Shown one piece after another: positions 13,236-39,000 of a DNA stretch of 64,000 bases (position 1 is its first letter; every line of letters begins with the position of its first letter). The notes below the pieces were generated by a model that saw only the letters and a program-made list of their open reading frames with translations, did no database searches and was not told where the DNA came from. Position numbers and translations under genes: made by a program. The stretch covers positions 124,001-188,000 of the IMG/VR virus record IMGVR_UViG_3300045999_010033. One strand, written 5' to 3'.

Positions 13236-16200
13236 AATTTCTTAATTTTCTTTTTAAATCATGTATTTGAATCTGCTGCTCCTTAACTGCCTCAATCAAT
13301 AAAGGTATAATCTTTTCGTAACGCACTGAAAGATAACCGGTATCATTCTGTCTTATAGCTTCAGGTAATACCGATTGTATTTCTTGAGCAATCACACCAA
13401 CATCTACGCCATCGTATCCATGTATGGTTTTATATTCCGGCTTCCAATTAAATCGCACACCTGATAATGTATTTACTTTATCTAATGCGTTTTCAATCGG
13501 ACTTATTATATCTTTTAATCTTTCATCCGATGTAGAATATGCTACAATATCGTTACTTGCATCTATTCTACCATCAGTATCACTCGGACTTATATTTCCT
13601 CCAACTGCAAGAGAACCTGCTGTTATTTTAACATCTCCAGTAACAACATTTATTGCATCTCCGTTTGATGTACCAGTCACACTTAATGTGTTTCCATTGA
13701 ATGTCAAATTAGATTCAACTGTAGCGTTTGGTGCACTTCCATTTAATGTTATAACTCCATTATCAGTTGTGCCAGTTAGTGTTAAAGAGCCATTTGCCCC
13801 ACTACTTCCACTACTTCCACTACTACCGCTGCTTCCATTTTGTCCGCTCGTTCCGCTGCTGCCGCGCGTGCCACTAGTACCACTGCTTCCGGCGGTTCCG
13901 CTAGTCCCGCTACTACCTGCTGAACCGCTACTTCCTGCAGTTCCGCTGCTACCACTACTACCTGCAGTTCCGCTGCTTCCTGCAGATCCACTACTGCCAC
14001 TGCTGCCGGTTGAACCGCTACTTCCTGCAGTTCCGCTGCTTCCGCCGGTTCCACTTGTCCCGCTGCTACCGCGCGTACCGCTCGTGCCGCTACTGCCACT
14101 GCTACCCGTTGAACCGCTACTGCCACTACTTCCTGCAGTTCCACTACTACCGGTTGAACCGCTACTTCCGCTACTTCCATTTTGTCCACTGGTCCCGCTG
14201 CTTCCTGCTGTCCCGCTACTTCCGCTGCTACCGCGCGTTCCACTAGTTCCGCTGCTTCCGCTGCTTCCATTTTGTCCGCTGGTCCCGCTGCTTCCTGCAG
14301 TTCCGCTGCTGCCACTACTACCAGTTGAACCACTACTTCCGCTACTTCCGCTGCTTCCATTTTGTCCACTGGTCCCGCTGCTTCCTGCAGTTCCGCTGCT
14401 GCCACTGCTTCCTGCTGTCCCGCTACTTCCGCTGCTTCCGCGCGTTCCACTAGTTCCGCTGCTTCCTGCGGTTCCGCTACTACCACTACTACCGTTTTGT
14501 CCACTGGTCCCACTACTTCCGCTGCTTCCACTACTACCGCTGCTTCCATTTTGTCCGCTCGTTCCACTACTTCCTGCAGTTCCGCTGGTCCCGCTACTTC
14601 CTGCAGTTCCGCTGGTCCCGCTACTTCCTGCAGTTCCGCTGCTGCCGGTTGAACCACTACTTCCACTGCTACCTGCTGTCCCGCTGCTACCACTGCTGCC
14701 GGTTGAACCACTACTTCCGCTGCTGCCACTGCTTCCGGCAGTTCCGCTACTACCACTACTTCCGGCAGTTCCGGATGCACCTCTACGACCCGATATATTT
14801 ATATCCCAATTACTACGATTAGTAGTTACAGTATTAAATGTTATATTTAAAATTAATGTTGTTCCTGAGTAGGAAGTTATATTACCTTCCATGTATTCGT
14901 TAGCATCTAAACCATACGCTACAATTAAAGTTTGTCCATTAGTATATGATAATTCGGCAGATGCTACCGTAAAAGTTTTTGAACCGGTTCCAGTTCCGTG
15001 AGTAGTGGTCGATGTTGTTGCATATCTACCTCCTGAAATTCCTGATGATCCACTACTTCCACTACTTCCACTTGTTCCTGCACTACCGCTGCTTCCACTG
15101 CTTCCGCTACTTCCACTACTTCCTGCAGTTCCGCTCGTTCCGCTACTTCCATTTTGGCCGCTCGTTCCACTACTTCCGCTACTTCCTGCAGATCCACTAC
15201 TGCCGCTGCTACCAGTTGAACCGCTACTACCTGCCGAGCCAGACGTACCACTACTTCCACTACTTCCGGTTGACCCGCTGCTACCGCTCGTTCCACTACT
15301 GCCATTTTGTCCGCTCGTTCCACTGCTTCCGCTACTTCCATTTTGTCCACTCGTTCCACTGGTCCCGCTACTTCCGCTACTTCCGCTGCTTCCACTGCTA
15401 CCTGTCGTTCCGCTGCTTCCTGCGGTTCCGCTGCTTCCACTTATTCCGGCGGTGCCGCTACTTCCACTACTTCCACTGCTTCCATTTTGTCCACTCGTAC
15501 CACTGCTTCCGCTACTTCCACTACTTCCGGTCGTTCCGCTACTTCCTGCAGTTCCGCTACTTCCGCTTATTCCTGCAGTACCGCTGCTTCCGCTGCTTCC
15601 TGCGGTTCCGCTACTTCCGCTGCTTCCATTTTGTCCACTCGTGCCACTACTACCATTTTGTCCGCTGCTTCCGCTGCTTCCACTGGTCCCCGAAGAGCCC
15701 GCAGGACCCGTAGCTCCTCCTAAGTTTACATCCCAACCATCTACGGTGGCGGTACCACTTATAGAATCTACATTTATTGTTAATAAGTTTGCGGCATAGG
15801 TAATGACCGTACCTTCTATTTTGTTTCCCGGATTACCAATGTCTGCTATTAATACCGGTTGTCCGGTTGTATATGAAAGGCCCGGAGTATTAAGGGTAAA
15901 TGAAATATCATCATTTACATTTATTGCCGAAAGTGTAAATTCTGTGTATGATGTTGTTGAGTATTTATCACCACCACTTTGTCCACTAGTACCACTCGAT
16001 CCAGATGATCCTGCTGTCCCACTTTCTCCGCTTGTTCCGCTACTTCCACCCGCACCGCCAATACCCGAAGTTCCATAATAAAGTCTATTATCGGTATCTA
16101 TTACTATTGTTCGGGTAGCACTATTATTTTCAGTTATAGTTGGTAAATAAAACGCACCACTTATAATTATTTCATCGGTATTTGCAATAAATAGGTCACT

Positions 16201-17403
16201 TCTTGCTCCATCATTTGTACCGTCACCTATTATGAAAAGTCCAGTTGTGTTATTTTTTCTATTATATTTTCCTACTACAGTTTGATATGAACCGGATGCA
16301 ATTGTTCCAATGCCTTCTGCGTGAGATGCTTCACCAAGTGCAACCGTGTTTGAACCTTCGGCGTGGGAATATAATCCTCTTGCTTCGGTGTAGTATCCCT
16401 CCGCGTGTGATGCAGTTTGATATGTTTGTGTAGAATATCCTTCCGCATGAGATGCCACTCCGGTTGCGGTAGTTGAACGTCCTTGTGCTACGGAATATAT
16501 CGCAGTTGCATTTGATTGATATCCCATTGCTACTGATGCAGTTCCTGATGCAGTTGTACCTATACCTTGTTCAATTGATGCACTTACTTTTAATTTATTT
16601 TCATTAAATGTTAAGTTTATAGATGCTGTCGCAGCTAATGGATTTGTTCCATCTGCTACCAATACTCTATTAGTGTTTGGTGTATGTATTCCTGTGAAAG
16701 AAACCCCACTACTGCCACTACTACCTGCGGTTCCGCTACTTCCTGCAGTCCCACTGCTACCACTGCTACCCGCGGTTCCGCTACTACCACTGCTTCCGGC
16801 CGAACCACTACTTCCACTACTTCCTGCAGTTCCTGCTACTCCACTACTTCCGCTGCTACCACTTGAGCCGGTATTTCCGCTGGTCCCGCTCGTGCCGCTA
16901 CTTCCGCGCGTTCCGGACGTACCGCTACTTCCACTTGTACTGCTGGTTCCGCTGCTGCCACTACTGCCATCTTTTCCACTACTTCCGCTACTTCCTGCCG
17001 AACCGCTACTTCCACTAACACCACTACTTCCTGCCGAACCGCTACTACCATTTGTCCCACTATTTCCAGATGACCCGCTACTACCGGCCGAACCGCTACT
17101 ACCTGCAGTTCCGGATGTGCCGTTTACTGCAGAAACTGTTGTATATTGTAATAATCCGGTTGTTGTATCTACAACGACGTATGTTGCTATTGAATTGTTA
17201 ATTGTAACTCCGGTTGCATACAACTGAGTTCCTTTCACATTTCCAGTAATTAGAACATTACCGGTTGTTTGTACGTTTAATGGTAATAAAGAAATGGTTG
17301 AACTGCCATCATTTATTTTTAGTACACTACCATCTAAGTAAAATTCACCGTGCGATAGAGATGGTGTTGATCCACCACGTCTAATTTGAAAAATAGATGC
17401 CAT
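13219..17403 (-). CDS. tail fibre (1394 aa) with Gly-Ser/Thr triplet blocks, YadA/Hep_Hag-like head repeats and C-terminal peptidase S74 intramolecular chaperone
   Basis: N-terminal IFQIRRG anchor motif; 14-aa repeats xSHAEGxxT (~16290-16580); YSTSDERLKDIISPIENALDKV...VGVIAQEI...VRYEKIIPLLIEAVKE is S74-type. Confidence 0.85.
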   Translation of the reverse strand: MASIFQIRRGGSTPSLSHGEFYLDGSVLKINDGSSTISLLPLNVQTTGNVLITGNVKGTQLYATGVTINNSIATYVVVDTTTGLLQYTTVSAVNGTSGTAGSSGSAGSSGSSGNSGTNGSSGSAGSSGVSGSSGSAGSSGSSGKDGSSGSSGTSSTSGSSGTSGTRGSSGTSGTSGNTGSSGSSGSSGVAGTAGSSGSSGSAGSSGSSGTAGSSGSSGTAGSSGTAGSSGSSGVSFTGIHTPNTNRVLVADGTNPLAATASINLTFNENKLKVSASIEQGIGTTASGTASVAMGYQSNATAIYSVAQGRSTTATGVASHAEGYSTQTYQTASHAEGYYTEARGLYSHAEGSNTVALGEASHAEGIGTIASGSYQTVVGKYNRKNNTTGLFIIGDGTNDGARSDLFIANTDEIIISGAFYLPTITENNSATRTIVIDTDNRLYYGTSGIGGAGGSSGTSGESGTAGSSGSSGTSGQSGGDKYSTTSYTEFTLSAINVNDDISFTLNTPGLSYTTGQPVLIADIGNPGNKIEGTVITYAANLLTINVDSISGTATVDGWDVNLGGATGPAGSSGTSGSSGSSGQNGSSGTSGQNGSSGSSGTAGSSGSSGTAGISGSSGTAGSSGTTGSSGSSGSSGTSGQNGSSGSSGSSGTAGISGSSGTAGSSGTTGSSGSSGSSGSSGTSGTSGQNGSSGSSGTSGQNGSSGTSGSSGSTGSSGSSGTSGSAGSSGSTGSSGSSGSAGSSGSSGTSGQNGSSGTSGTAGSSGSSGSSGSSGSAGTSGSSGSSGSSGISGGRYATTSTTTHGTGTGSKTFTVASAELSYTNGQTLIVAYGLDANEYMEGNITSYSGTTLILNITFNTVTTNRSNWDINISGRRGASGTAGSSGSSGTAGSSGSSGSSGSTGSSGSSGTAGSSGSSGSTGSSGTAGSSGTSGTAGSSGTSGTAGSSGTSGQNGSSGSSGSSGSSGTSGQNGSSGSSGTAGSSGTSGTRGSSGSSGTAGSSGSSGTAGSSGTSGQNGSSGSSGSSGSTGSSGSSGTAGSSGTSGQNGSSGSSGTSGTRGSSGSSGTAGSSGTSGQNGSSGSSGSTGSSGTAGSSGSSGSTGSSGSSGTSGTRGSSGTSGTGGSSGTAGSSGSTGSSGSSGSAGSSGTAGSSGSSGTAGSSGSAGSSGTSGTAGSSGTSGTRGSSGTSGQNGSSGSSGSSGSSGANGSLTLTGTTDNGVITLNGSAPNATVESNLTFNGNTLSVTGTSNGDAINVVTGDVKITAGSLAVGGNISPSDTDGRIDASNDIVAYSTSDERLKDIISPIENALDKVNTLSGVRFNWKPEYKTIHGYDGVDVGVIAQEIQSVLPEAIRQNDTGYLSVRYEKIIPLLIEAVKEQQIQIHDLKRKLRNYGFTV
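13790..14790 (-). repeat. (Gly-X-Y)n block, X/Y = Ser/Thr/Ala, with GQN and GTR units
   Basis: GC-rich imperfect 9-nt tandem repeats; translation GTAGSSGSSGSTGSS...; boundaries approximate. Confidence 0.95.
15030..15718 (-). repeat. (Gly-X-Y)n Ser/Thr block
   Basis: Imperfect 9-nt tandem repeats, GSSGTSGQNGSS units; boundaries approximate. Confidence 0.95.
16705..17121 (-). repeat. (Gly-X-Y)n Ser/Thr block
   Basis: GTSGTAGSSGSAGSS...GSSGVS; 9-nt periodicity. Confidence 0.95.
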
Positions 17404-17459: not shown

Positions 17460-19550
17460 TCAAATGTGCGATTTAAGAGAATCAATCACAATTTTTGCTG
17501 TAATTGATTTAGTGCATTCAAATTGTCGGTCAGTTCCTTTATGAATAGGACACCAATTCCAATCTCCCGCATCTAATCGGTGTGTGTTGAAACAATTTGA
17601 ACACTTATCTTGCGGTGCGGTTATTCTTATTGTGTTTGATTTAGTTTCTGTATAGTCTGCACTAAATCCTGATATTATACACATTCTGGTCCCCACTGCC
17701 CAACTTAACCAACTAAGTCCGCTACTTATTCCTATGAATAATTTTGATTTTTGCAATATTTCTATTACGTTATCAAATGAACTTTCTTCTAATTTTTCTA
17801 TACCGGGCGGATGCCAATTGCCCATGTATCCATTACCTTCTTTTGATAGTAAAACTACACGATATCCTGCCGATTTAAGGTAATCTACAACTTCTTGCCA
17901 ACCCGTTGGATTATTCCAATATTTGGCTTGAGCAGTTGAATGTATTGCTATTGAAACTATATTTTCTTTTTCTATATTTGGTTTTAATTTTATATTTGGT
18001 TTAATTTCTTTAAAATCGAGGCCAAGTATATCAGATGCAGTTTTTTGCAATTCTTGTGGTTTAAAATCTAATGGATTTTTATTATAATCAACATTTCCCT
18101 CTGCATTATAGTACCAACCAATTGTGTACATTGCATACAAATCGTTTACAACATCACCAGGATTTACAAATTCTATCTCAGGGTAGTTTTCCTTAAACAG
18201 ATTATTATGAAAAGTTGAACATATTACATTACAATCGTGCTTCTTTCTAAATTCATCTACATATGGAAACCATGCTAACGTATCTCCTATGGATTTAGAA
18301 TCTAACGCAATATAAACACGCTTACCTTTTAGTGATATTTCATATTTGTATCTCGTTTCACCATCATCTGCTATTACCATCCAATCTACATAATGAGATT
18401 TATTTGTTTTAATCCAACAATTACGGCCTATGATGCCTGAATGTTCTATTCTTCCAGTTTTTTTATCAATAAATTGTACGTTATATCTTTTATCCGGTCC
18501 ACCTTTTATTTCAAAAAACGCACTTTGTATAAAATTAATATTAAAAGATGGTCTTTCTTTTAAAGATGGTTTTGGATTTATTTTTGTAAGATTATAATTT
18601 TTTATTAAAATTTCTCGCATAGAATCTGAATTAATATAATATTTTATTAATTTTTTTGTTATGTTTTTCCAAGATAGTTCATTTGCCTGCGATAACGCAT
18701 CCGATTTATACTCTACGTATGTAAAATTATGCATTAAATATTCAATTGCTTGCACAATTAAATCTACATCACGTTCAACATACACCATACCCTTTATTGA
18801 GTTATCGGATTCAAATGTACCAATTACGGGTAATCCGCATGCCATTGCTTCCAATAGTGTAAGGTTTGGATGCCCTGCTTCTAATACCGATGGATGTAAG
18901 AATATAGTATGTTGCTTATATAAATCTCTCAACTCTTCTTCCGAAACGTCATATAATATTGTTAATTTATCATAATCACTTGGGTACTTTTGGAAATAAT
19001 TTTTGTTGTTTGATGGCCCTGCAATGGTTATTGGTAATCCCATTCGTTTTGCCGCTTCTATTGCAAATCCAAACCCTTTACGGTCTTCGGTTTGGTCAAA
19101 AGCAAACCCATTGTTGGCTACACAAAGTAATCGGTGTTCCGTTGTTTCACCCGGAGTAAACCAATCAGTATTAACACCATGTGAAAGGTATTCAGGTATT
19201 CCATCAAAGTATTCAATAAGGTATTTTGCAGGAACAAATGCACGTTTGGCATTACGAATAGCTTTTAGATTTTCCTTATACAATTCCGAATCCTTACCAT
19301 ATAAAAATGTATGGTGGTCATGTAATGTAAAGTAGTATGGGATACCACGTTCATACGCCATATTGGCCAAGTTTGCTACATGGATATGAACGATATCTTC
19401 ACTACCATCTATATCATCTAAATATTTTATTTGGGAATCGTATCCTAAATCCAATAGGTTATTATGAATTTCCCAAATTATTTTTTCAACAGCTCCCCAT
19501 CCATTTGGAGGTATTGGCAGTAACCCCGGAGTGACATTAACTATTTTCAT
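17460..19550 (-). CDS. bifunctional glycosyltransferase: N-terminal GT4 (GT-B) domain plus C-terminal Aah/TibC-like (autotransporter O-heptosyltransferase family) domain
   Basis: GT4: IPPNGWGAVEKII, EAGHPNLTLLEAMACGLP. C-terminal: KRVYIALDSKSIGDTLAWFPYV, FIGISSGLSWLSWA and the 4-Cys motif CSNCFN...WNWCPIHKGTDRQFECTKSIT. Confidence 0.8.
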   Translation of the reverse strand: MKIVNVTPGLLPIPPNGWGAVEKIIWEIHNNLLDLGYDSQIKYLDDIDGSEDIVHIHVANLANMAYERGIPYYFTLHDHHTFLYGKDSELYKENLKAIRNAKRAFVPAKYLIEYFDGIPEYLSHGVNTDWFTPGETTEHRLLCVANNGFAFDQTEDRKGFGFAIEAAKRMGLPITIAGPSNNKNYFQKYPSDYDKLTILYDVSEEELRDLYKQHTIFLHPSVLEAGHPNLTLLEAMACGLPVIGTFESDNSIKGMVYVERDVDLIVQAIEYLMHNFTYVEYKSDALSQANELSWKNITKKLIKYYINSDSMREILIKNYNLTKINPKPSLKERPSFNINFIQSAFFEIKGGPDKRYNVQFIDKKTGRIEHSGIIGRNCWIKTNKSHYVDWMVIADDGETRYKYEISLKGKRVYIALDSKSIGDTLAWFPYVDEFRKKHDCNVICSTFHNNLFKENYPEIEFVNPGDVVNDLYAMYTIGWYYNAEGNVDYNKNPLDFKPQELQKTASDILGLDFKEIKPNIKLKPNIEKENIVSIAIHSTAQAKYWNNPTGWQEVVDYLKSAGYRVVLLSKEGNGYMGNWHPPGIEKLEESSFDNVIEILQKSKLFIGISSGLSWLSWAVGTRMCIISGFSADYTETKSNTIRITAPQDKCSNCFNTHRLDAGDWNWCPIHKGTDRQFECTKSITAKIVIDSLKSHI

Positions 19551-20349
19551 TTATATAATTTAATATCTTTTCGTTTTCTAACTTATCTTTTGTACCATGA
19601 TAAAAATATACACGACTGGAATCTTCACATTGTTCGTACATATTTTCATCTATAAAACTTTTTTTAATATTATAGTTTTTTTCACACAATTTAAATGTAG
19701 TAAATTTATGCGTATTTACAAAAATTCTATCATATTTTTCATTTAAATTATTTTTCCATAATAAAACATTTGCAGCGGTTTCATCTCTAAATGGAAAATA
19801 TGATGTGTGATTTTTTAAAAGATATTTATTTTCACAAATAGATTTCCATTCTTCTAAAAAATCAATTGAGTGTTTATCAAACGTAAAAAAACAAGCCATA
19901 ACATAAAACATAGATCTGTCTACTACTCCAAAGTATTTCATTAATTTTGTTTCATCAAATAAAATTGTTTCAGTATCACTTTTCCAAAAAGTAAATGGAT
20001 ATTCTATAACTCCCTCCGAAAAGCAAGGATATCCTAAATTTGATTTTATTTGAAATTGATTAAATCTTTTAGAAAGTATTATATCAGAGTCAAAATAACA
20101 AAAATCACCGTCAGTTCTATTCAACGCATCTAAAGAAATGGATGGTTTATAAAAATCAAATTTAGGTAAATAATTAATTTTTGGCCAAGGTATTTTTATT
20201 AAATTTTTGTGCTGTAAATTCGAATTGTATCCAATTGTATAATAGAATATATTATCCGGCTCAAAATTCGCGTATTGAAACGATTTTAAAAGATTTGAGA
20301 CCTGATATTCATAATTTATATCCGATAATACTACTATATTCATTTCCAA
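19537..20349 (-). CDS. GT-A fold glycosyltransferase (DxD type)
   Basis: 270 aa; FYKP, CYFDSD (DxD), FRDETAANVLLW and FYHG motifs; overlaps both neighbours (translational coupling). Confidence 0.7.
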   Translation of the reverse strand: MEMNIVVLSDINYEYQVSNLLKSFQYANFEPDNIFYYTIGYNSNLQHKNLIKIPWPKINYLPKFDFYKPSISLDALNRTDGDFCYFDSDIILSKRFNQFQIKSNLGYPCFSEGVIEYPFTFWKSDTETILFDETKLMKYFGVVDRSMFYVMACFFTFDKHSIDFLEEWKSICENKYLLKNHTSYFPFRDETAANVLLWKNNLNEKYDRIFVNTHKFTTFKLCEKNYNIKKSFIDENMYEQCEDSSRVYFYHGTKDKLENEKILNYINENS

Positions 20350-23300
20350 AAATTATATATTCTAAGTGTTCCATCTCCTAAAAAAAGTTGAAATGTAGAA
20401 AACCCAGTCGATGTCATTCTATCCATTATATATTTTGAATCATCTTCATTTAATATATTTCCATGAAATTCCAAAGAAACTTTTTTAACTTTAGATAAAT
20501 TTTCATCCGATATTCCTTCTAATACTTTTCTTTCATAGCCTTCTACATCGATTTTTAGAAAATCAATTTTTTCAAAAACATTATTTTCAAATAATGAATC
20601 TAATGTAGTAACTGGTACAAATTCGGATATTTGTCCTTCATTTGCAAAAGTTCCACACATTGTATCATCCGTTGAGTTTAAAAATATATTTTCAAATCCA
20701 TTTTTATTTGAAACACCCATTTTAAATATTTCACTATTTATAGGCTTGTTTCTTATTAGGCATTCAAACGCAATTTTACTCGGTTCAAAACTATATATTT
20801 TAGAAGCACCCTTGTAATACGCTGAGTTTGAAAATACCCCAACATTTGCCCCCAAATCAACAACAATATCACCATCTTCTATTTTACAATCAAATCTTTC
20901 ATATATACATCCATTTGTATATTCATCATAAGTAAAATGCATTTCTTTAAACATATGGTTACTTCCATCCATAAGTCCTATCCACATTTTATCCCATGTA
21001 AAATCTTCACTAAAATTATACAAATCGTAAAGCTTTATTTGTTGGTTTTTATTTAACCAATAATTTTTTTTTATTTTTGATGCATAAATAAATTTAGTAT
21101 TTTTTACTGTAGATTGTTCAACCTTAAATCCTAATTCTTTTAATTTTTTAATCATATTTTCTACTTTACCCATACCATTTTCAAAGTAAAAATCATGATA
21201 TTCAATTAAAAAGCTATCTATTTTTTCTACAATTTCTTTTGAAAGAGTATCTATTATACCAAATTCTGCTCCTTCTACATCAATTTTTATTAAATCTATT
21301 TTTTCTTCGTTAGAATTTTTTATAGCTTCTTCTAATGTAATAGCACTTACATCATACGATGGAGAGTGACCGGATTCTGCTATAAGAGATGAAATCAAAG
21401 AGTTTTCTTCATTTATGTAAAATTTTAGTGATGCGTTTTCCTTGTAAATTGCTTTATCAATTATTGTTATATTTTTATCATTTTTTAATGATTTTTCTAA
21501 ATGAAGTAACGCTTTTTTATTTGGCTCAAAGCAATATACCTTTTTTGCATTTCTAGATAAAATGTATTTTGTCCAAAGTCCAACGTTTGCACCAATATCA
21601 AATACAACTTTACAATTATCTAAATCATATGAATCATATATTCCATCTATAAAAAATTCTTCATAATTTAGAAAAATAGGTTCAGTATTTGATATATTTA
21701 ATTCTGGTTTTTTTATGGGGATATCTTTTAATTTCAATTCCTTAAACTCCAATAGTTGTTCATTTTCATTGTAGTATTCTATTAAAAATCCTGAAAAATT
21801 TGGATGATTTTTAAAATCAATTACATGCTTTGGCAGTGGGATAGTCCAAAACCAAGCTCCAGAATTAGCAGGAGGTAAAGACATTGAGTATATGCATGCT
21901 TTCGAATCTACATCTTTAATACATAATTTTAAATGTTTATCTATGTTTTCTAAATATACTATATTGAATTTGTTTTCATTTTCATCAAATTTTAAATCTA
22001 TTGGTAATTTCATTTTTTCTTTGTTATCCCGATTATTAAATTTTATTTGTCCTGCGTTTGAATACAATTGGATATCATTAGAATTGTATTCAATTACTTT
22101 TGTTTCAAGTAAACTTTTATTTACAAATGTTTTAATTTTTATAGTGCAACTATCGTTTAATTTTACAATTTTATATTTTTTATTATTTTGATATAAAAAT
22201 GAATCAACTTTTTTATCTGAAAGTTGAATTTCAAAATCATATTCAATTAAATCATTTGTTGTAATTATAAGGTATGCAGTTTTTTCTTCATCTAAAAGTA
22301 TTTCATACTTAATACTCTGATATGATGATATATTTATTTGGCTATCAAAAAAATAATCTTTAACATAGTTTTTTATTAAAAGTACTTTATTTTGATTAAA
22401 ACACTTATAAAAAAAATACTCTAAACAATTAGGAAATTGTGAAGCAAAATTTTGATTATAAATTTCCAAATCAATCGGAAAATATGAATTAAATTGATTT
22501 AAAAATGATTCCGTCTTTCCAATAAAAAAGCTTGTTTCATAATATTGGCCAACGATATCGCCAAATACTGCTTTTGGTGGATAAAAGAAAACAAACTCTT
22601 TTTCTTCTTTAATCATTTCATTTTCTAATAATTGTATTTGTTCTATTCCTTTTTTCGAATATTTGTGATCAAACTCACAAAAATAGAAATGGTCATATCC
22701 TAAACTTTTAGCAGAATTTAATGCTAATCGCATAGAACGTATGATTGGAAATTCATGCGAATAATTTAAATTTTGTAAAATACTAAAATCTTCATTTATA
22801 TCATACGCGTAATTATGGCTAACGTTAAATCTATTATCCGAATCATATAAATGATAATCTACCGATGAAACTATATCTCCTGGCAATGTGCAATGTGATA
22901 CAATCATAATTGGGCATCGCATTGGTTTTATAGATTTTATACAATCTCTAAGAAGATTTAATTTAACATCAGTAGTTGCATATGTATCTATTATAAAAAT
23001 TTTATTTTTACTATTTGTTTCTATATTTTCATTTTTTTTTAATCCCAATATTTCTACAATCTTTTCCGAATTAACATCGGAATCGATATTGTTCAAATAC
23101 TGAATATTTTCATACTTATCAAAATATCCCAAATAAACATCTAAATTGTAAATTAAACTAGGTATGTTCCAACCAATTGCTTCTCTAATAACAAGTGGCA
23201 TGGTTTCTTTATCAGTAGAATGACCACGAGATGTAAACAAAAATAAATCTGCCATTTCATAAAACGTATCTACATCACTACGTTCTCCCCACCATTTACA

Positions 23301-24002
23301 ATTTGATGGAAAATCCCGCATAATCGGCTCCCAATAGTGCCTAAAATTATCCGCTTGGTTACCTATAAAGTGAAATTGAATTGGATATCCTTTTAACTTT
23401 CTTGCATATTCAATAACTTCTGCTTGATTTTTTCTTGGTGTAAAAAGACCCACATTTATAACGTGCCTAACATTCGGGTCTAAACCTAATCCGATTAGTA
23501 TTTCTTCCCTACTACGTGTTTTTGTTTTAGATTCAATTGGATATTCTACCAATTCAGTTGGAATACCCAATACTTTAAATTTATTTACCTGATAATCTGA
23601 AACCATTAAGAATCTATCAGGAAAATGCAATTTACCATTAATATCAAATCCGGAATCGTGAGATGTTTCTATAATTTTATACTTCCTATCTTCTTTATAA
23701 ATTCTGAGAGCAAGTTCGTATGGAATAAAATATTCGGGTAATTCTTGAAAATGAATTATATCGGGGTTTATACCAACTATTTCATTTAGTATCCAATTTT
23801 TATCTTCACCCAATGTAATCAATCGTTTTCCAAGTATAGATTCGATACGATTTCGTTGAACTACTAATTTTCCACCGGTATGATTATCCCATTCAATACA
23901 ATATATCTCATAATCATTTATGAGAGATTCTATTTGTTTATAAAGATATTGAGGTTGCCCACCGGTTGATAAATGTGGCGTTATAAAAAGTAACTTTTGC
24001 AT
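20340..24002 (-). CDS. multidomain protein: GT4 glycosyltransferase + putative GT-A-like domain + two FkbM-family SAM methyltransferases
   Basis: 1220 aa; FITPHLSTGGQPQYL, NVGLFTPRKNQ, ETMPLVIREA (EX7E); FkbM1 VFDIGANVG...EPN...IKIDVEGAE; FkbM2 VVDLGANVG...FEPS...LKIDVEGYE. Confidence 0.85.
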   Translation of the reverse strand: MQKLLFITPHLSTGGQPQYLYKQIESLINDYEIYCIEWDNHTGGKLVVQRNRIESILGKRLITLGEDKNWILNEIVGINPDIIHFQELPEYFIPYELALRIYKEDRKYKIIETSHDSGFDINGKLHFPDRFLMVSDYQVNKFKVLGIPTELVEYPIESKTKTRSREEILIGLGLDPNVRHVINVGLFTPRKNQAEVIEYARKLKGYPIQFHFIGNQADNFRHYWEPIMRDFPSNCKWWGERSDVDTFYEMADLFLFTSRGHSTDKETMPLVIREAIGWNIPSLIYNLDVYLGYFDKYENIQYLNNIDSDVNSEKIVEILGLKKNENIETNSKNKIFIIDTYATTDVKLNLLRDCIKSIKPMRCPIMIVSHCTLPGDIVSSVDYHLYDSDNRFNVSHNYAYDINEDFSILQNLNYSHEFPIIRSMRLALNSAKSLGYDHFYFCEFDHKYSKKGIEQIQLLENEMIKEEKEFVFFYPPKAVFGDIVGQYYETSFFIGKTESFLNQFNSYFPIDLEIYNQNFASQFPNCLEYFFYKCFNQNKVLLIKNYVKDYFFDSQINISSYQSIKYEILLDEEKTAYLIITTNDLIEYDFEIQLSDKKVDSFLYQNNKKYKIVKLNDSCTIKIKTFVNKSLLETKVIEYNSNDIQLYSNAGQIKFNNRDNKEKMKLPIDLKFDENENKFNIVYLENIDKHLKLCIKDVDSKACIYSMSLPPANSGAWFWTIPLPKHVIDFKNHPNFSGFLIEYYNENEQLLEFKELKLKDIPIKKPELNISNTEPIFLNYEEFFIDGIYDSYDLDNCKVVFDIGANVGLWTKYILSRNAKKVYCFEPNKKALLHLEKSLKNDKNITIIDKAIYKENASLKFYINEENSLISSLIAESGHSPSYDVSAITLEEAIKNSNEEKIDLIKIDVEGAEFGIIDTLSKEIVEKIDSFLIEYHDFYFENGMGKVENMIKKLKELGFKVEQSTVKNTKFIYASKIKKNYWLNKNQQIKLYDLYNFSEDFTWDKMWIGLMDGSNHMFKEMHFTYDEYTNGCIYERFDCKIEDGDIVVDLGANVGVFSNSAYYKGASKIYSFEPSKIAFECLIRNKPINSEIFKMGVSNKNGFENIFLNSTDDTMCGTFANEGQISEFVPVTTLDSLFENNVFEKIDFLKIDVEGYERKVLEGISDENLSKVKKVSLEFHGNILNEDDSKYIMDRMTSTGFSTFQLFLGDGTLRIYNFWK

Positions 24003-33019: not shown

Positions 33020-36000
33020 TTATATTGTTCTAATTATGAATTTGCCAGTCCAAGTTCCTGCTGATGCAGAACCTGTCATTACCATATTTGACCCGGATAT
33101 TATTGATGTAAAGGCTACGCCTGATGTGTTTCCAAAATCAACCGTAGATACATCACTAACAACAGTTGATGCCCCAGACCACATCGCTATAAATTGTCCC
33201 ATTCTTGCATTAGAACCACTCCTAATTGTGTATTCAACAAACATTCCATCGTAAGAACCGGTACTCATACTATAAATTGTAGTTGAACCTGTTATAGATA
33301 CACGCTTAGTTGTATTCAATACGGGTGCAATACTATCTCCCATCAATACCGTATCATCCGAAAATACTTCCAATATCGGAAGACCCGAAATATCATTCAC
33401 AGAGAATAGTGAACCCGAAAGGTTATCAGTAACTGAAAATAGTTCACCTTGGCTGCCTAATACACTAAATATAGATTGAGAAGAACCTGAACCATGTATG
33501 ATTGCACGTTGTACTCCGGAGCCGGATACTAATAGTGTGGATGATGTAAGTGATGTTGCAATTACGCTACCCGTTACATTTAATACACTACCATTAAAAT
33601 TAAGATTTGCTTCCGCAACTGCACTATTTACACTACCATCCGATGTTAATACTCTATTATCTGCAGGTGTCGCTATTGTGGTAAATCCGGTACCACTTGT
33701 TCCTGCAGTTCCGCTGCTTCCTGCTGTCCCGCTGCTGCCACTACTGCCGGTTGAACCGCTACTTCCACTGCTTCCTGCTGTCCCGCTGCTGCCACTACTG
33801 CCGGTTGAACCGCTACTTCCACTGCTTCCTGCTGTCCCGCTGCTGCCACTACTGCCGGTTGAACCACTACTTCCACTGCTTCCTGCCGTGCCGCTGCTGC
33901 CACTACTTCCAGCGGTTCCGCTACTGCCGCTGCTACCGGTTGAACCACTACTGCCCGCACTACCACTGCTTCCTGCAGTTCCGCTGCTTCCGCTACTACC
34001 GCTTGTTCCCGAAGAACCTGCTGTCAATAGATTTGTTCCTACACCTGCTGCTGCTTCTGTTAAATCTATATATGCACCCCTTGCTGCACCTCCTTGTTCA
34101 AAAAATCTTAATTTATTTTGATAAGAATCGATAGTTATACCACTACCAGTGAGTGAGTTATTAGTAGCTGATTTATTTAGTAATATTTCACCACCCTCGT
34201 CACCCGATTGATATAATATACTTAATTTAGTACCATCAAATGTTAAAAGTGATTCTGCGTTCGCTTCCCCTTGAGTTCCCGTTGCGGTTAATATTCTATC
34301 ATTAGCATTGTTTAATATGTTTGCAACACCACTCGTACCGCTGCTTCCGCTGCTTCCTGCAGTTCCGCTGCTGCCACTACTGCCGGTTGAACCGCTACTT
34401 CCACTGCTTCCTGCAGTTCCGCTGCTGCCACTACTGCCGGTTGAACCGCTACTTCCACTGCTTCCTGCAGTTCCGCTGCTGCCACTACTGCCACTGCTTC
34501 CTGCTGTCCCGCTGCTGCCACTGCTGCCGGTTGAACCGCTACTTCCACTGCTTCCTGCAGTTCCGCTGCTGCCGCTACTGCCGGTTGAACCACTGCTTCC
34601 GCTACTTCCACTGCTTCCTGCCGTCCCCGATGTGCCCGAAGTTGCTGCAGTATAAGATGTACCGTTTATTATCAGTGAACCGGATATACTAACAGAGCCG
34701 GTAAATTGATGTGTATTTGATACCAATGTTCCGAATTGTGTGGAACCGGTAATCAATTCGGTCGAAGAAGTAATAATTTGCGAAACTATTCTTTGTGCAA
34801 CTAATGTATCTCTTACCGTAAAGTTATCCGCAGAAGATGCGGTTAGCGCCAGTACCGCGAGTGATGCGGTTTGTGCAAATGATGCGGATGTGGCATTAAG
34901 TGGTGTACCATTTATCCAAACCCCACCATTGTAAACTAATGCCTGTCCATTTGTAGGAGTTGTAATATTTACATCCGATAAATCATCCAGAGTTTGTGTT
35001 ATATTTGTAGCAGCTGAAGACCCACCCGATGTATTTCTAAAAGAACCCGCTTGTATAAAAATTGCTTGTGATGTATTTGTTAAATCACTAGCATTTCCCT
35101 GAACTAATAGGTATCCCGCAAAAATTAATGATTTAGCGGTAAACTCACCTTCTACAAAACTATCAGAAAGTAACGCAGATAAAGCGTTTGCTATTGATGT
35201 ATATGAATTATGTCCGTAGTATATTACTGCACGCTTAGATTCGGGACTATAAAATATTCTTTGAATAGTAACGTTAGGACCAGATACACTTGATAATCCA
35301 TTTCCGTTATCATATTTTGTAGGATCCACTACGGTGTAATAGTTGCCATTATTACTGTCCAAATATATTCCAGATCCAGTTCTATACGCCCTAGCCATAG
35401 ATGCAGTAAGAGCAGGTGTAGCAGTATAATGTGATGGACTATTAGGATTTTGTGAATAATATCCACCTAAAAAGAATCCCGTACCATCTCCTATATTGAT
35501 TCTTAGCGAACCACTTTGGCCCGATGGTGTGAATCCATTTACTTTTATCGGTCCGAATGACCTAATAAAATCATTTTGTTGTGTATCACTATTATATGTA
35601 GTTTGTACACTACTTGCGTATCCTGTTATACTTGAATAGTTTGGATGTGTAACTAATCCAAGAGGTATTGCCTCCTCGTATTGAGTTTCATCAAAATAAG
35701 AAGTTTGTTGGAAGATTACTCCTGTCCCATCAACGTATAAATAAGTCGTTTGTGATGAAGTTATGTATTGTGCAGATGCAGTATAATCATTCCAATTAAC
35801 GTAAGTAATAATAGGATTGATTTCCGACCCGCTGGTGGCATTCATATTATTAATGATACCACTACCTTTTTTAACATATATTACACTGCCACTAAAAGAA
35901 ATACCTCCACCATATAATATTCCCGAACTTAATCCACCTTCTAACCATTTGAATTTGGTTAAGTTACCATTTTGACGATAATATAAATCATATCCGGTAG

Positions 36001-39000
36001 CTGTGTTAGAAGCAGATGTAAATAAGTACGATGCAGTTATGTTATTGGGTCCTGGATCTTGACCTGGATCTAATCTTAAATGTCCTTGTAATGTAAAGTT
36101 AGCAGTTGCATTTAATGATCCAGATACATTAACACTACCCGATAGTACACTTATTCCTATTAAGGTATTAGACCCACTTGTTATTAAACTACCGGTAACT
36201 ATTTGGTTTCCTACACTAACTGATGTTCCTATAAATGTCTGAGACCCCGATACGTTTATGCTGCCGGTTATGGTTTGCGTTCCTATAATCGTACTTGAAC
36301 CCGTCAATCCATAAGAACCCGTTAATTGTTTAGAGTTTATCCAAACACTACCACTTCTAACTAAAAGGTCTCCCGATGTTATTCCATTAATTTTAACATC
36401 ATGCAGTTCATCTAATTCGTAACCATTATCTATTTTTACATATATCGAACCAACAGTCGCACTTACTCTTTCTACATATCCTAGTCTAACGGAATGTAGT
36501 GGCGCTTGTGGTGTGGTTTGTGTGTATTGTCCTGCCGAACTACTTAAATATACAAGTCCGCCGGCAGTTAATCCTAATGTGTTTAATTCATTGAGTGGAC
36601 CTTCGGTTTGTACGAATCCCTCCTCTCCCGAAAGTATTTGTTCTGCTACAAATCCTAATGTATTTGCCGAACCCAATTCAGCTGTCGCAGACGCACGTTT
36701 TACTGAAACACGATTTCCTTGTGAACCAAAAATATAAACTACAGTTCCTTTTGTTAATGTTGTCGCTTCTGCGTTAAATGCACGTATGAATAATTCTTCA
36801 CCAATTGCCAAGTTTACATTTCCACCTTTCAGTCCGAGATTCAATGTTCCGTATCCATCATCCCACCCCAATCTACCTTCTGCCTTTGGTTGGTCAGAAC
36901 CGGTAACAAAATTAATTACACTTGCGTTATTAATTGAGCCTGATATTTGAAGATTTTCAGAATACGATGCGGACACCGCTCGTAATGCCCAACTTGCAGT
37001 ACCATATAATGAGCTTGTAATATTTGTCGCATTTATAGACCCGGTTACATTTAAAACCGAACCATCAAATGTTAAGTTAGCTTCGGCATTAGCACTATTT
37101 GCACTACCATCCGATGTTAGTATTCGATTATCTAAAGGATTTGATATTGTATTAAATCCTGTACCGCTGGTGCCTGCACTTCCACTACTTCCTGCAGTTC
37201 CGCTGCTTCCTGCTGTCCCACTGCTTCCGCTGCTTCCACTGCTTCCTGCCGTTCCGCTGCTCCCTGCTGTCCCACTGCTTCCACTGCTTCCTGCCGTTCC
37301 GCTGCTTCCGCTGCTTCCATCGGTTCCGCTACTTCCACTGCTTCCTGCCGTTCCGCTGCTTCCGCTGCTTCCATCGGTTCCGCTACTTCCACTGCTTCCT
37401 GCCGTTCCACTGCTTCCGCTGCTTCCATCGGTTCCGCTGCTTCCACTGCTTCCACTGCTTCCATCGGTTCCGCTACTTCCACTGCTTCCTGCAGTTCCGC
37501 TGCTTCCACTGCTTCCTGCCGTTCCGCTGCTTCCGCTGCTTCCATCGGTTCCGCTGCTCCCTGCTGTTCCGCTGCTTCCACTGCTTCCTGCAGTTCCGCT
37601 ACTCCCTGCTGTCCCACTGCTTCCGCTGCTTCCGCTACTTCCATCGGTTCCGCTGCTTCCACTGCTTCCTGCCGTTCCGCTGCTCCCTGCTGTCCCACTG
37701 CTTCCGCTACTTCCATCGGTTCCGCTGCTTCCACTGCTTCCTGCCGTTCCGCTGCTTCCGCTGCTCCCTGCAGTTCCGCTGCTGCCGGTTGCTCCTACTG
37801 CTGCTATCCATTGAGTTCCATCCCAACGATATATGTCGGTATCGGATGTATTATAATATAAAGAGCCACTTTTGAATGAACCGGTCGGACTTGAACTATA
37901 ATTGGGTAATTTAAATTGCGTTTCTGCATCAATAGCAGATGCTGTCAAACTTCCTGAAAGTGAAAGTGAGCTTGTAAATATTATTGTATTTACATTTACA
38001 GAAAATTCAGCTCCACCCGATATAGATACTGATCCGGTAAATTGATGTAAATCACTCCCACTTACTCCGAATTTAGATGAACCCGTAACAAAACTGATAG
38101 ATGATGTAATAGTTTGGACATGTATTCTTTGAGCAACTATTGTATCACTAACATTTATCGAACCGGTTACCACTAATGTATTACCATCAAATGTTAAATT
38201 GGATTCGGCAACCGCAGTATTGGTAGTTCCATCCGATGTAAGTATTCTATTATTTGCTGGATTTGAAATTGTATTAAATCCTGTCCCACTCGTACCACTA
38301 CTTCCGCTGCTTCCGCTGCTTCCACTACTTCCTGCAGTTCCGCTGCTCCCTGCTGTCCCACTGCTTCCGCTGCTTCCATCGGTTCCGCTGCTTCCACTAC
38401 TTCCTGCAGTTCCGCTGCTTCCACTACTTCCTGCAGTTCCGCTGCTCCCTGCTGTCCCACTGCTTCCGCTGCTTCCTGCAGTTCCACTGCTTCCTGCAGT
38501 TCCGCTGCTTCCGCTGCTTCCTGCAGTTCCGCTGCTTCCTGCAGTTCCGCTGCTTCCTGCAGTTCCTGCCGCTGCTATCCATTGAGTTCCATTCCAACGA
38601 TATATGTTTGTATCACCTATATTATAATATAATGAACCGGTGCTAAATGATCCCGATGGGTTAGAGTTGTAAGTTGGTAAAGTAAATCCGGTTGCAGCAC
38701 CAATATAAGATGATGTGAAACTTCCACTAATTAACATTGAACCGGTAAAGGAAATACTATCAATATTTGCAGTGAACACATTCCCAACACTACCCGATAT
38801 ATTTATCGAACCAGTTACTTCGAGTCCTCCACTAATTTGAGTATTCGTGTTTACTTTGAATCCATATGCAGGGTCTACCGAGGCAGTAACACTGCCTGAT
38901 GATATTCTTGAAAGGTTTAATCCTACTACACTTGATGCGGATATGTTTGTTATTCCTGCACCATTTCCTATAAATGAACCAGAGAATGAACCACTAAATA

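What the first reader, a model, noticed from the sequence alone, without database searches (positions are those of the whole stretch)
13790..38570. Nine proline-free (Gly-X-Y)n blocks with X/Y almost only Ser, Thr or Ala
Seen: Gly every third residue for about 30 to 330 residues per block, across three fibres, with gene-specific dialects (GQN and GTR in the 1394-aa fibre, GTD in the 2301-aa fibre, GST throughout). Established: bacterial and phage collagen-like domains are usually rich in Pro or charged residues; Gly-X-X repeats can also form polyglycine-II bundles (snow flea antifreeze protein). Inference: either an unusual collagen needing glycosylation, a PGII bundle, or a flexible hydrated spacer. 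At about 0.29 nm per residue, a 330-residue triple helix would span about 95 nm.
Basis: partly seen in the sequence, partly recalled or inferred. Interest (0 to 1): 0.62.

Follow-up and report, generated by a model that had tools for sequence, protein, structure and literature searches.

The report
Sugar-coated collagen-like phage fibres
Three fibre genes of a 221-kb T4-like phage carry long proline-free Gly-Ser/Thr-Ser/Ala collagen-like stretches, and the gene just upstream encodes a TibC-type enzyme that puts heptose sugars on serines, so these are probably sugar-stabilised collagen shafts of a common but unstudied kind.

Summary
There are 470 Gly-X-Y triplets in nine blocks (36 to 336 residues) in three minus-strand fibre ORFs. 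S+T+A make up 93% of X/Y, with one Pro and 21 charged residues. The window is the structural module of a complete 221-kb T4-like phage.

The composition is not unique. A word search found more than 1,000 similar proteins, and viral contigs hold uninterrupted runs of up to 753 triplets.

The new point is genetic. The gene directly upstream of the 1394-aa fibre encodes a GT4 domain fused to a TibC/Aah-family protein-serine O-heptosyltransferase (NCBIfam equivalog 286 bits against a cut-off of 200; PDB TibC E 6e-56). The catalytic Asp and all four iron-binding Cys are kept. The next large gene adds a GT1 domain and two FkbM methyltransferase domains.

Of 35 dereplicated viral loci with this enzyme, 20 have Pro-poor, S/T-rich GXY runs within 10 kb. 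Only 1 of 39 control loci around capsid genes does (p = 1e-7). The pairing recurs in the cultured Microcystis phage Mel-JY01 and in bacterial two-gene cassettes. It is absent beside classical autotransporter-type homologues.

A trimer model supports the knot between two blocks (0.87 against a best control of 0.00) but is not confident about the GXY arms.

Best reading: O-glycosylated collagen-like shafts. A glycosylated spacer that is not triple-helical is not excluded.

The parts
13219..17403 (-). Fibre ORF of 1394 aa (P0001), 53% of it in GXY blocks, with a C-terminal intramolecular chaperone domain
   Evidence: Pfam Collagen E 5.5e-97, Peptidase_S74 at aa 1292-1350, and several PHROG tail-fibre families
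16699..17121 (-). GXY block 1 of P0001 (aa 95-235): 46 Gly-phased triplets plus one in-register Gly-to-Ser triplet
15967..16074 (-). GXY block 2 of P0001 (aa 444-479, 12 triplets)
15025..15717 (-). GXY block 3 of P0001 (aa 563-793, 77 triplets; holds the only Pro)
13783..14790 (-). GXY block 4 of P0001 (aa 872-1207, 112 triplets, 336 residues, the longest)
13354..13530 (-). Peptidase_S74 (endosialidase-type intramolecular chaperone) domain of P0001, with an SDERLK motif at its start
   Evidence: 54.9 bits, cut-off 22; the motif is read
17472..18497 (-). TibC/Aah-family protein O-heptosyltransferase domain (aa 352-693 of the 696-aa P0124), in the gene immediately upstream of P0001
   Evidence: TIGR04414 286 bits, cut-off 200. 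PDB 4RB4/4RAP E 6e-56. D423, T539, K543, W614 and C650/653/667/679 kept; V595 replaces Arg-286
18621..19550 (-). N-terminal GT4/GT1-type glycosyltransferase domain of P0124
   Evidence: Glyco_trans_1_4 E 3.5e-12, Glycos_transf_1 E 1.2e-9
20340..24002 (-). 1220-aa P0125: GT1 domain (aa 3-331), unassigned middle part, and two FkbM-type methyltransferase domains (aa about 799-961 and 1036-1200); GC 0.26
   Evidence: Its N-terminal domain is 41% identical to the fused glycosyltransferase beside another collagen+S74 fibre
25540..28218 (-). Fibre ORF of 892 aa (P0003)
27457..27888 (-). GXY block of P0003 (aa 111-254, 48 triplets)
33020..39925 (-). Fibre ORF of 2301 aa (P0002)
38279..38566 (-). GXY block 1 of P0002 (aa 454-549, 32 triplets)
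37157..37795 (-). GXY block 2 of P0002 (aa 711-923, 71 triplets)
34322..34636 (-). GXY block 3 of P0002 (aa 1764-1868, 35 triplets)
34016..34330 (-). Domain between blocks 3 and 4 of P0002 (aa 1866-1970), predicted to be a trimeric knot; it begins with the roughly 35-aa cap motif that follows 6 of the 9 blocks
   Evidence: ipSAE 0.87 against a best control of 0.00, with confident contacts at 1866-1970. One search shows the motif
33686..34018 (-). GXY block 4 of P0002 (aa 1970-2080, 37 triplets)

Best explanation
The nine blocks are collagen-like shaft segments of three trimeric fibres of a T4-like jumbo phage. Their G-[S/T]-[S/A] composition marks them as substrates of a phage-encoded protein O-glycosylation system.

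Shown here:
- Gly sits at every third residue for up to 112 triplets, while X and Y vary.
- The blocks sit between fibre domains, and one of these domains is predicted to be trimeric.
- One fibre ends in a Peptidase_S74 domain, which in known fibres acts as a trimerising chaperone.
- The gene directly upstream of that fibre encodes a TibC/Aah-family serine O-heptosyltransferase with its catalytic Asp and iron-binding Cys residues intact, fused to a GT4 domain.
- The next large gene carries a GT1 domain and two FkbM methyltransferase domains.
- This heptosyltransferase clade is found beside Pro-free Ser/Thr-rich GXY runs across many viral and some bacterial lineages.

Inferred:
- In the infected cell the enzyme loads heptose onto Ser, probably the dominant Y-position Ser. 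The donor would be an NDP-heptose from the host or from the phage's own rfaE-like genes.
- The other domains extend and methylate the sugar.
- The dense glycan and its bound water then do the stabilising job that Pro/Hyp or Lys-Asp/Glu salt bridges do in characterised collagens.
- The trimeric knots between blocks and the S74 chaperone set the chain register.
- The result would be thin glycosylated rods, about 41, 150 and 212 nm of helix in total per fibre, that set reach and shield the fibre.
For: Periodicity and composition. Selection on Gly: all 470 Gly codons keep GG, while their third base has 1.58 bits of entropy. Roughly 40% of X and Y codons differ from the commonest Ser codons. The blocks end at recognisable domains, not in decayed repeats.

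Position grammar: Thr and Ile/Leu/Val at X, and Ser/Asn/Asp/Ala at Y, recur in 23 separate viral lineages.

Trimer context: Peptidase_S74. Homotrimer model of P0002 aa 1815-2020: median ipSAE 0.87, best of 3 controls 0.00, partner pLDDT at least 60, runs agreeing in at least 61% of contacts; in calibration the mark was reached by 21 of 30 solved pairs and 0 of 23 single chains.

Enzyme: TIGR04414 286 bits against a cut-off of 200; TibC PDB E 6e-56; residue mapping, using the residue roles given in PMC4358343.

Association: 46 of 80 viral loci with the enzyme (21 of 35 clusters) have GXY runs of at least 10 triplets within 10 kb. Of these, 44 loci (20 clusters) are Pro-poor and S/T-rich, against 1 of 80 loci (1 of 39 clusters) around capsid homologues. 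Fisher p = 1.3e-7 on clusters. Of 14 enzyme-bearing records with no run within 10 kb, 8 have Collagen matches elsewhere in the record. Among 5 capsid relatives, the enzyme and Collagen are both present in the same 2 and both absent (over cut-off) in the other 3. In the reverse test, 4 of 10 loci with S/T-GXY have the enzyme and 0 of 69 without it do.

Other lineages: an unrelated collagen+S74 fibre has both glycosyltransferase domains fused next to it, plus a methyltransferase. The cultured phage Mel-JY01 has the same cluster. In bacterial genomes, 18 of 26 close homologues sit beside short S/T GXY runs, against 0 of 18 classical homologues. A quick tree separates the two groups.

Sugar supply: rfaE-domain-I-like and -II-like genes and other sugar-modifying genes lie elsewhere in the genome.

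Precedent: glycosylated Thr can turn a non-helical Gly-Pro-Thr peptide into a triple helix (cited in PMC11923368).
Against: No glycan, trimer or triple helix has been measured.

The trimer model places confident contacts only in the knot between blocks (aa 1866-1970). The GXY arms are low-confidence.

Ser- and Gly-rich sequence is the classic flexible linker. From memory of host-guest peptide scales, Ser and Thr rank low for triple-helix propensity.

Arg-286 of TibC, which contacts adenine, is Val here, so the donor nucleotide is uncertain. No gmhA was found in the genome, and the rfaE-like hits are below the equivalog cut-offs.

In bacteria the paired proteins have only 10-60 triplets. This suggests the repeat may be an acceptor motif in its own right.

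Glycosyltransferases in phage fibre regions have been read by others as host O-antigen modifiers (PMC7029224).

A subclade of 10 viral homologues has no GXY run within 10 kb.
Confidence: 0.55

Rival explanations
1. Glycosylated but not triple-helical. The G-[TS]-[SNA] period is the acceptor motif of the heptosyltransferase, and the blocks are mucin-like, sugar-stiffened extended spacers. Three of them lie side by side in each trimeric fibre.
For: The same association data fit this reading. Bacterial partners have only 10-60 triplets in small secreted proteins. The GXY arms of the trimer model are low-confidence. There is no Pro and almost no charge. Dense O-glycosylation alone can give extended PPII-like chains (PMC12262190, abstract only).
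Against: An acceptor motif would not need unbroken Gly phase over 112 to 753 triplets. The blocks are clamped at both ends by fibre domains, which holds three chains in parallel and in register, the condition under which GXY chains form a helix. The Pfam Collagen scores are very strong.
Confidence: 0.22
2. An ordinary unglycosylated collagen-like triple helix. The neighbouring glycosyltransferase and methyltransferase genes act on something else, such as host surface polysaccharide or another virion protein.
For: Glycosyltransferases are common in fibre hypervariable regions of marine myophages and have been read as host O-chain modifiers (PMC7029224). The glycosyltransferase genes have lower GC (0.26) than their neighbours, suggesting separate acquisition.
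Against: The enzyme belongs to a family whose known members glycosylate protein serines, not lipopolysaccharide (PMC4358343). Its clade tracks S/T-rich GXY runs across viral lineages and bacterial two-gene cassettes, and the two are lost together in relatives.
Confidence: 0.12
3. Unmodified flexible Gly/Ser linkers that simply tether the fibre domains. The Gly period would be a by-product of expansion of a 9-nt DNA unit.
For: The DNA arrays have periods of 9/18/27/54 nt, some 97-98% identical. 91% of Ser codons in the blocks are AGY, against 32% outside them, which fits expansion from a simple unit.
Against: Many arrays are only 55-75% identical, yet no Gly codon has changed, while about 40% of X/Y codons differ from the commonest Ser codons. 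The X-versus-Y grammar is conserved across lineages with different DNA repeats. The link to the glycosyltransferase would be unexplained.
Confidence: 0.06
4. Polyglycine-II bundles of the snow-flea antifreeze or phage S16 gp38 type.
For: Gly at every third residue with small side chains is compatible with PGII helices. This rests on recall and no tool result supports it.
Against: Known PGII bundles are built from short strands joined by turns. Here the runs are uninterrupted for up to 336 residues (753 triplets in relatives) with no turn signals. Each block joins two separate domains, and the DNA super-periods differ from block to block.
Confidence: 0.03

Closest known systems
Collagen-like phage tail fibres (Pfam PF01391 with Peptidase_S74; PHROG 6320, 5073, 8745, 1806; E. 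coli prophage EPclA; P-SSM2 orf28)
   Same: GXY runs inside trimeric fibre proteins, some with the C-terminal chaperone domain. Strong matches to these families. Cyanophage P-SSM2 orf28 is reported with X/Y often Pro, Ser or Thr (PMC1079782).
   Different: The characterised examples rely on Pro at X and about 22% charged residues (PMC11923368 on EPclA). Here there is 1 Pro and 21 charged residues among 940 X/Y positions, the blocks reach 336 residues, and a glycosylation cluster is linked.
TibC / Aah autotransporter O-heptosyltransferases (BAHT family, TIGR04414, PDB 4RAP/4RB4)
   Same: P0124 aa 352-693 scores above the equivalog cut-off. It keeps the catalytic Asp, Thr-226, Lys-230, Trp-305 and the four iron-binding Cys. 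It has Ser at the position that lets Aah accept both heptose epimers (PMC4358343).
   Different: It is encoded by a phage and fused to a GT4 domain. Arg-286 is replaced by Val. It lies in a separate clade. Its neighbours are GXY-repeat proteins, not strand-loop-strand beta-helix autotransporters.
BclA of the Bacillus exosporium and vent-worm cuticle collagen (glycosylated Thr collagens)
   Same: Collagen-like helices that lack Hyp, in which O-glycosylated hydroxy-amino acids are thought or shown to stabilise the helix (PMC8968730, PMC11923368).
   Different: Those use Gly-Pro-Thr, with Thr at Y and Pro at X. Here Thr is at X (30%, against 6% at Y), Ser dominates Y, there is no Pro, and the predicted sugar is heptose, not rhamnose-anthrose or galactose.
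Mycobacteriophage virion glycosylation
   Same: Phage-encoded glycosyltransferases that decorate structural proteins (cited in PMC12619734).
   Different: There the glycans sit at the C-termini of capsid and tail-tube subunits. Here the inferred target is a long repeat within fibres, and the enzyme family is different.
Mimivirus collagen-like fibril proteins
   Same: A virus-encoded collagen together with virus-encoded modifying enzymes (PMC8968730, PMC9614988).
   Different: Mimivirus uses lysyl hydroxylation followed by glucosylation in a eukaryotic host. Here the GXY blocks contain a single Lys and the enzyme is a serine heptosyltransferase type.

Membership tests
Collagen triple-helix repeat (PF01391) | Gly at every third residue over many consecutive triplets; score above the Pfam gathering threshold | tested here: met
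   470 triplets, with runs of up to 112. 318, 223 and 73 bits against a cut-off of 27.2.
Collagen triple-helix repeat (PF01391) | Known sequence stabilisers: Pro/Hyp in X/Y, or Lys-Gly-Asp/Glu salt-bridge triplets | tested here: not met
   1 Pro and 21 charged residues among 940 X/Y positions. Viral collagen-like proteins in UniProt are reported with KGD as 13% of triplets (PMC11923368).
Collagen triple-helix repeat (PF01391) | Three parallel chains in a supercoiled PPII helix | tested here: inconclusive
   The trimer model passes (0.87 against 0.00), but confident contacts are confined to the knot at aa 1866-1970 and the arms are low-confidence. CD and EM are needed.
Fibre with a C-terminal intramolecular chaperone (Peptidase_S74) | S74 domain at the C-terminus, with a Ser...Lys pair at its start | tested here: met
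   P0001 aa 1292-1350, 54.9 bits against a cut-off of 22. An SDERLK motif is read. That this Ser/Lys pair is the cleavage dyad is from recall. Only P0001 has the domain.
BAHT (TibC/Aah) protein O-heptosyltransferase | Equivalog-level sequence match over the whole enzyme | tested here: met
   TIGR04414 286 bits, cut-off 200, profile positions 25-372 of 374. PDB 4RB4 E 5.7e-56.
BAHT (TibC/Aah) protein O-heptosyltransferase | Catalytic base Asp-110; sugar and phosphate contacts Thr-226, Lys-230, Trp-305; adenine contact Arg-286 | tested here: inconclusive
   D423, T539, K543 and W614 are kept. Arg-286 is V595. TibC R286A abolished or largely diminished activity (PMC4358343), so the donor nucleotide may differ.
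BAHT (TibC/Aah) protein O-heptosyltransferase | Iron-finger: four Cys (339, 342, 358, 370) | tested here: met
   C650, C653, C667 and C679.
BAHT (TibC/Aah) protein O-heptosyltransferase | Substrate is an autotransporter passenger with strand-loop-strand repeats | tested here: not met
   Neighbours in the window, in 20 of 35 viral clusters and in 18 of 26 close bacterial homologues are G-[ST]-[SNA] repeat proteins. The classical homologues (33-39% identity) have none. It probably works like a BAHT but on a different substrate class.
BAHT (TibC/Aah) protein O-heptosyltransferase | Dodecameric ring; measured heptosyl transfer | not testable with these tools
   Needs biochemistry.
Polyglycine-II bundle (snow-flea antifreeze, S16 gp38) | Short PGII strands joined by turns into a compact bundle | tested here: not met
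   There are no interruptions over as many as 336 residues, and each block joins two separate domains. The fold itself is not testable here.
BclA-type glycosylated collagen | Gly-Pro-Thr repeats with Thr at Y | tested here: not met
   Thr is 30% at X and 6% at Y, and Pro is absent. The same bias holds in 23 other lineages.

The most novel reading that the evidence does not exclude
A distinct clade of TibC-like enzymes and G-[Thr/Ser]-[Ser/Asn/Ala] repeats form a widespread, undescribed enzyme-substrate system. It would make heptose-coated collagen whose triple helix is held by sugar and not by proline or salt bridges. Phages would use it to build fibre shafts from about 40 nm to more than 600 nm long (runs of over 750 triplets), and some bacteria would use it on small secreted proteins.
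Probability: 0.42. Interest if true: 0.85.

Novelty: new variant of a known kind. Interest (0 to 1): 0.7.

Why it matters
It is unresolved how collagen-like helices stay folded without hydroxyproline. The characterised answers are proline, charge pairs and, in a few cases, glycosylated threonine. These fibres have none of the first two, and they come with a specific, testable candidate for the third: a phage-encoded serine heptosyltransferase with helper sugar enzymes.

If confirmed, this would be:
- the first protein O-heptosylation system of a virus;
- a new substrate class for the BAHT family, so far known from autotransporter substrates (PMC4358343);
- a likely explanation for many similar proteins in environmental viromes;
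- a reason to reconsider the usual reading of glycosyltransferases in phage fibre regions as host-surface modifiers.

Proline-free, enzyme-glycosylated collagen rods of programmable length would also interest biomaterials research. The cultured Microcystis phage Mel-JY01 carries the same gene cluster, so the idea can be tested directly.

Tried and rejected
- Megablast of 10 kb of the window against GenBank phages found nothing. The closest capsid genes are only 53-54% identical.
- The nearest fibre-domain relative among isolates, Flavobacterium phage immuto, has no GXY block.
- A PDB sequence search with the central 840 aa of the 2301-aa fibre gave no match.
- The roughly 35-aa cap motif after 6 of the 9 blocks is not a general collagen-capping motif. 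A loose pattern for it follows only 6 of 328 blocks, in 4 of 120 similar proteins.
- The 1431-aa protein with a cytidylyltransferase-like N-terminus is NMN-adenylyltransferase-like, not sugar-activating. It was dropped from the model.
- No gmhA was found in the genome.
- The careful tree search did not finish, so only the quick tree with SH-aLRT support is cited.
- Monomer structure prediction, fold searches and the large profile search were left unused. A single chain of a trimeric fibre is uninformative, and the word search and family scans had already settled the identities.
- Only genetic code 11 was used, and no contig looked human.

Full report
**What the window is.** All long ORFs lie on the minus strand and GC is about 0.30-0.35. 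Family scans find a T4-type portal, a gp23-like major head protein, a tail sheath, a T4 baseplate protein and a large terminase. The window is bases 124001-188000 of a 221,095-bp IMG/VR virus record rated 100% complete. The nearest capsid genes among isolates belong to Microcystis phage Mel-JY01 (54%) and Flavobacterium immuto phages (53%). Viral contigs hold capsid relatives at 62-80% identity.

**The observation.** The 1394-aa, 892-aa and 2301-aa ORFs contain 470 triplets with Gly at every third residue. They form nine blocks of 36 to 336 residues. One block has a single in-register Gly-to-Ser triplet.
- S+T+A make up 92.8% of X/Y, with one Pro and 21 charged residues.
- Pfam Collagen scores are very high, and the 1394-aa protein ends in a Peptidase_S74 chaperone domain.
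- Many PHROG tail-fibre families match.

**Repeat history and constraint.** The DNA shows tandem periods of 9, 18, 27, 45, 54 nt and longer. Matches range from 55% to 98%, so some arrays are recent and others are old.
- 91% of Ser codons in the blocks are AGY (AGC 50%), against 32% (AGC 4%) in the rest of the same genes. Block GC is about 0.52. This fits growth from a simple GGN-AGY-AGY unit.
- Despite this divergence, every one of the 470 Gly codons keeps GG, while the third base is nearly random (1.58 bits). About 40% of X and Y codons differ from the commonest Ser codons.
- Blocks end at recognisable domains, not in decayed repeats.
- X and Y are not interchangeable. Thr sits at X (30% against 6%), and Ala, Asn and Asp sit at Y.
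- The same grammar (Thr and Ile/Leu/Val at X; Ser, Asn, Asp at Y) recurs in 23 separate viral lineages.

These points argue for a structural or enzymatic constraint, not a free linker.

**Architecture.** Six of the nine blocks are followed by a conserved motif of about 35 residues. This motif is rare outside this phage's near kin. Two blocks of the 1394-aa fibre are separated by repeated domains of about 80 aa (30% identity).

The fibres share modules. The 79 residues before the 892-aa fibre's block are 84% identical to those before block 3 of the 2301-aa fibre. The C-terminal parts are 46% identical.

A homotrimer model of the 2301-aa fibre, aa 1815-2020, covered half a block, the 101-aa domain and half of the next block.
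- It scored a median ipSAE of 0.87 against 0.00 for the best of three controls.
- Partner pLDDT was at least 60, and the runs agreed in at least 61% of contacts.
- In calibration the mark was reached by 21 of 30 solved pairs and 0 of 23 single chains.
- The tool notes that the calibration used two copies, not three.
- Confident contacts lie at aa 1866-1970, which is the knot between the blocks. The GXY arms are not confident.

So the blocks are probably clamped between trimeric knots. The triple helix itself is inferred, not shown.

**How unusual the composition is.** A word search with the 892-aa fibre's block returned 1,059 proteins at E <= 0.001 from a capped candidate list.
- Among the best 120, 105 have under 2% Pro in X/Y.
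- 31 have over 85% S+T+A (29 have both properties).
- Runs reach 136 triplets, and many carry Peptidase_S74.

Viral contigs contain uninterrupted runs of 315, 557, 573 and 753 triplets.

The literature treats viral collagen-like proteins as rich in charge pairs, with KGD at 13% of triplets, and names glycosylated Thr as an alternative stabiliser (PMC11923368). Reviews give Pro at X and Thr at Y as the bacterial norm (PMC8968730). The Pro-free, uncharged, Ser-rich type is therefore common in nature but lies outside the characterised regimes.

**The linked enzymes.** Between the fibre genes lie two large enzyme genes.

P0124 (696 aa, window 17460-19550) is immediately upstream of the 1394-aa fibre. 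It has a GT4/GT1 domain and a C-terminal half that is a TibC/Aah-family autotransporter O-heptosyltransferase.
- It scores 286 bits on NCBIfam TIGR04414 (cut-off 200) and E 6e-56 against TibC in the PDB.
- Using the residue roles in PMC4358343, the catalytic Asp-110, Thr-226, Lys-230, Trp-305 and all four iron-binding Cys are kept.
- Pro-300 is Ser, as in Aah.
- Arg-286, the adenine contact, is Val.

P0125 (1220 aa) has a GT1 domain and two FkbM methyltransferase domains.

Elsewhere the genome encodes rfaE-domain-I-like and -II-like proteins whose best matches are the heptose kinase and adenylyltransferase, although both are below the equivalog cut-offs. It also encodes RmlC-like and RfbH/PseC-like enzymes, an SAH nucleosidase and two more GT4-type genes. 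No gmhA was found.

**Association test.** IMG/VR holds 346 loci with a homologue of the TibC-like domain. The best 80 (49-63% identity) were scanned.
- 46 of the 80 have GXY runs of at least 10 triplets within 10 kb. This is 21 of 35 clusters after dereplication at 90% identity.
- 44 of those loci (20 clusters) have under 2% Pro and over 50% S+T. They hold 10,811 triplets in 1.38 Mb. Often the run starts about 170-500 nt from the enzyme gene.
- The control was 80 loci around capsid homologues of the same phage group. It gave 1 of 80 loci (1 of 39 clusters), with 13 triplets in 1.02 Mb. Fisher p = 1.3e-7 on clusters.
- Of 14 enzyme-bearing records with no run within 10 kb, 8 have Collagen matches elsewhere in the record. 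These include the only complete one, with 79 matches.
- Among five capsid relatives searched whole, the enzyme and Collagen (over cut-off) are present in the same two and absent from the other three.
- In fibre-domain loci, 4 of 10 with S/T-GXY have the enzyme, against 0 of 69 without.
- An unrelated collagen+S74 fibre is followed by a single 1001-aa protein. It fuses homologues of P0125's GT1 domain (41% identity) and P0124's TibC-like domain (39% identity), and a methyltransferase gene lies beside it.

**Cultured phage and bacteria.** Only four GenBank phage records carry the enzyme: three huge metagenomic phages and the isolate Microcystis phage Mel-JY01. In Mel-JY01 there is a plus-strand frame of at least 1016 aa full of GTS/GSS/GTR/GTD triplets. 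It is followed by a structural protein and a 1227-aa GT4 plus TibC-like fusion.

In bacterial genomes the result splits by similarity.
- Homologues at 44-54% identity (Methylobacter, Methylococcales, Polaromonas and others): 18 of 26 have short Pro-free S/T GXY runs, mostly right beside the gene.
- Homologues at 33-39% identity (Burkholderia, Paraburkholderia, Selenomonadaceae): none of 18 has one.

In Methylobacter luteus a 287-aa protein with a signal peptide and GTA/GTS runs directly precedes a stand-alone enzyme gene, between housekeeping genes. A quick maximum-likelihood tree separates the 18 classical bacterial enzymes from a 61-member clade (SH-aLRT 98). That clade holds all the viral (bar one long-branch row) and GXY-linked bacterial ones, and 39 of its members have a run within 10 kb.

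No paper in the searchable library combines heptosyltransferase, tail fibre and collagen-like.

**Interpretation.** The best-supported model is that these are collagen-like shafts of trimeric fibres that are O-glycosylated on Ser by the linked TibC-like enzyme.
- The enzyme would probably add heptose first. The other domains would then extend and methylate the sugar.
- The glycan shell would replace proline and salt bridges as the stabiliser.
- I put about 0.7 on the blocks being the enzyme's substrate and about 0.65 on a true triple helix. The joint estimate is about 0.55.

The main rival is that the repeat is an acceptor motif and the product is a mucin-like rod without a triple helix. The short bacterial partners and the low-confidence arms keep this alive. 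An unglycosylated helix, a plain flexible linker and a PGII bundle are less likely, for the reasons given under the rival explanations.

If the blocks are helical, the helix length per fibre totals about 212, 150 and 41 nm at 0.286 nm per residue.

**Limits.**
- Everything about sugar, trimer state and helix is inferred from sequence, gene context and one model.
- The GXY scans used six-frame translation, not gene calls.
- Many viral records are fragments.
- The tree is a quick search.
- Read-level data could not be obtained.

Noticed in passing
window 24340-25098 and 28490-33018 (minus strand): An array of about seven paralogous genes of 220-250 aa sits between the fibre genes. The four that were scanned match Laminin_G_3 (concanavalin-like lectin/glucanase). 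They may be interchangeable receptor-binding tips or fibre accessories.
   Followed up: partly
window 13783-17121, 27457-27888, 33686-38566: Ser codons inside the blocks are 91% AGY (AGC 50%), against 32% AGY (AGC 4%) in the rest of the same genes. Block GC is about 0.52 in a genome of about 0.33.
   Followed up: yes
L243 (Microcystis phage Mel-JY01, PP395634.1) 1-3052: The deposited CDSs at 1-651 and 739-2298 on the minus strand look like mirror-frame miscalls of a plus-strand collagen-like ORF of at least 1016 aa that runs across the record start. A second small GXY gene at 9152-9986 appears split into two overlapping frames.
   Followed up: partly
L100 6-6782, L098 9-6758, L119 15923-21079, L102 1-5013: These viral contigs hold uninterrupted Pro-free GXY runs of 753, 750, 573 and 557 triplets next to TibC-like genes. 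Several are cut by the locus end, so the true lengths are greater.
   Followed up: partly
L248 8923-11125 (Methylobacter luteus chromosome): A two-gene cassette lies between mfd and glycolate oxidase genes. It consists of a 287-aa signal-peptide protein with two GTA/GTS runs, followed by a stand-alone 432-aa TibC-like enzyme.
   Followed up: partly
G000:C1:79409-80176, 90841-91209 and neighbours (L161, L162; outside the window): The same phage genome has a sugar-nucleotide gene set: rfaE-domain-I-like and -II-like genes, RmlC-like, an RfbH/PseC-like aminotransferase, SAH nucleosidase, adenine phosphoribosyltransferase and two GT4-type genes. No gmhA was found.
   Followed up: partly
window 59600-63895 (minus strand): A 1431-aa ORF whose first 150 residues or so resemble NMN adenylyltransferase; the rest is unassigned. 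Flavobacterium phage immuto has a large NadR-like gene in a comparable place.
   Followed up: no
window 25540-28218 and 33020-39925: The fibres share modules. The 79 residues before the GXY block are 84% identical between the 892-aa fibre and block 3 of the 2301-aa fibre, and the C-terminal parts are 46% identical. This suggests recombination between fibre genes.
   Followed up: yes
window 13424-14872, 15005-15799, 27416-28234, 37170-37814 (plus strand): Long plus-strand ORFs overlap the blocks. They are mirror frames of the repeats and are unlikely to be genes.
   Followed up: partly
window 20001-24000: The GT1 plus FkbM gene has GC of 0.26-0.27, lower than the genes around it. This fits separate acquisition.
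   Followed up: no
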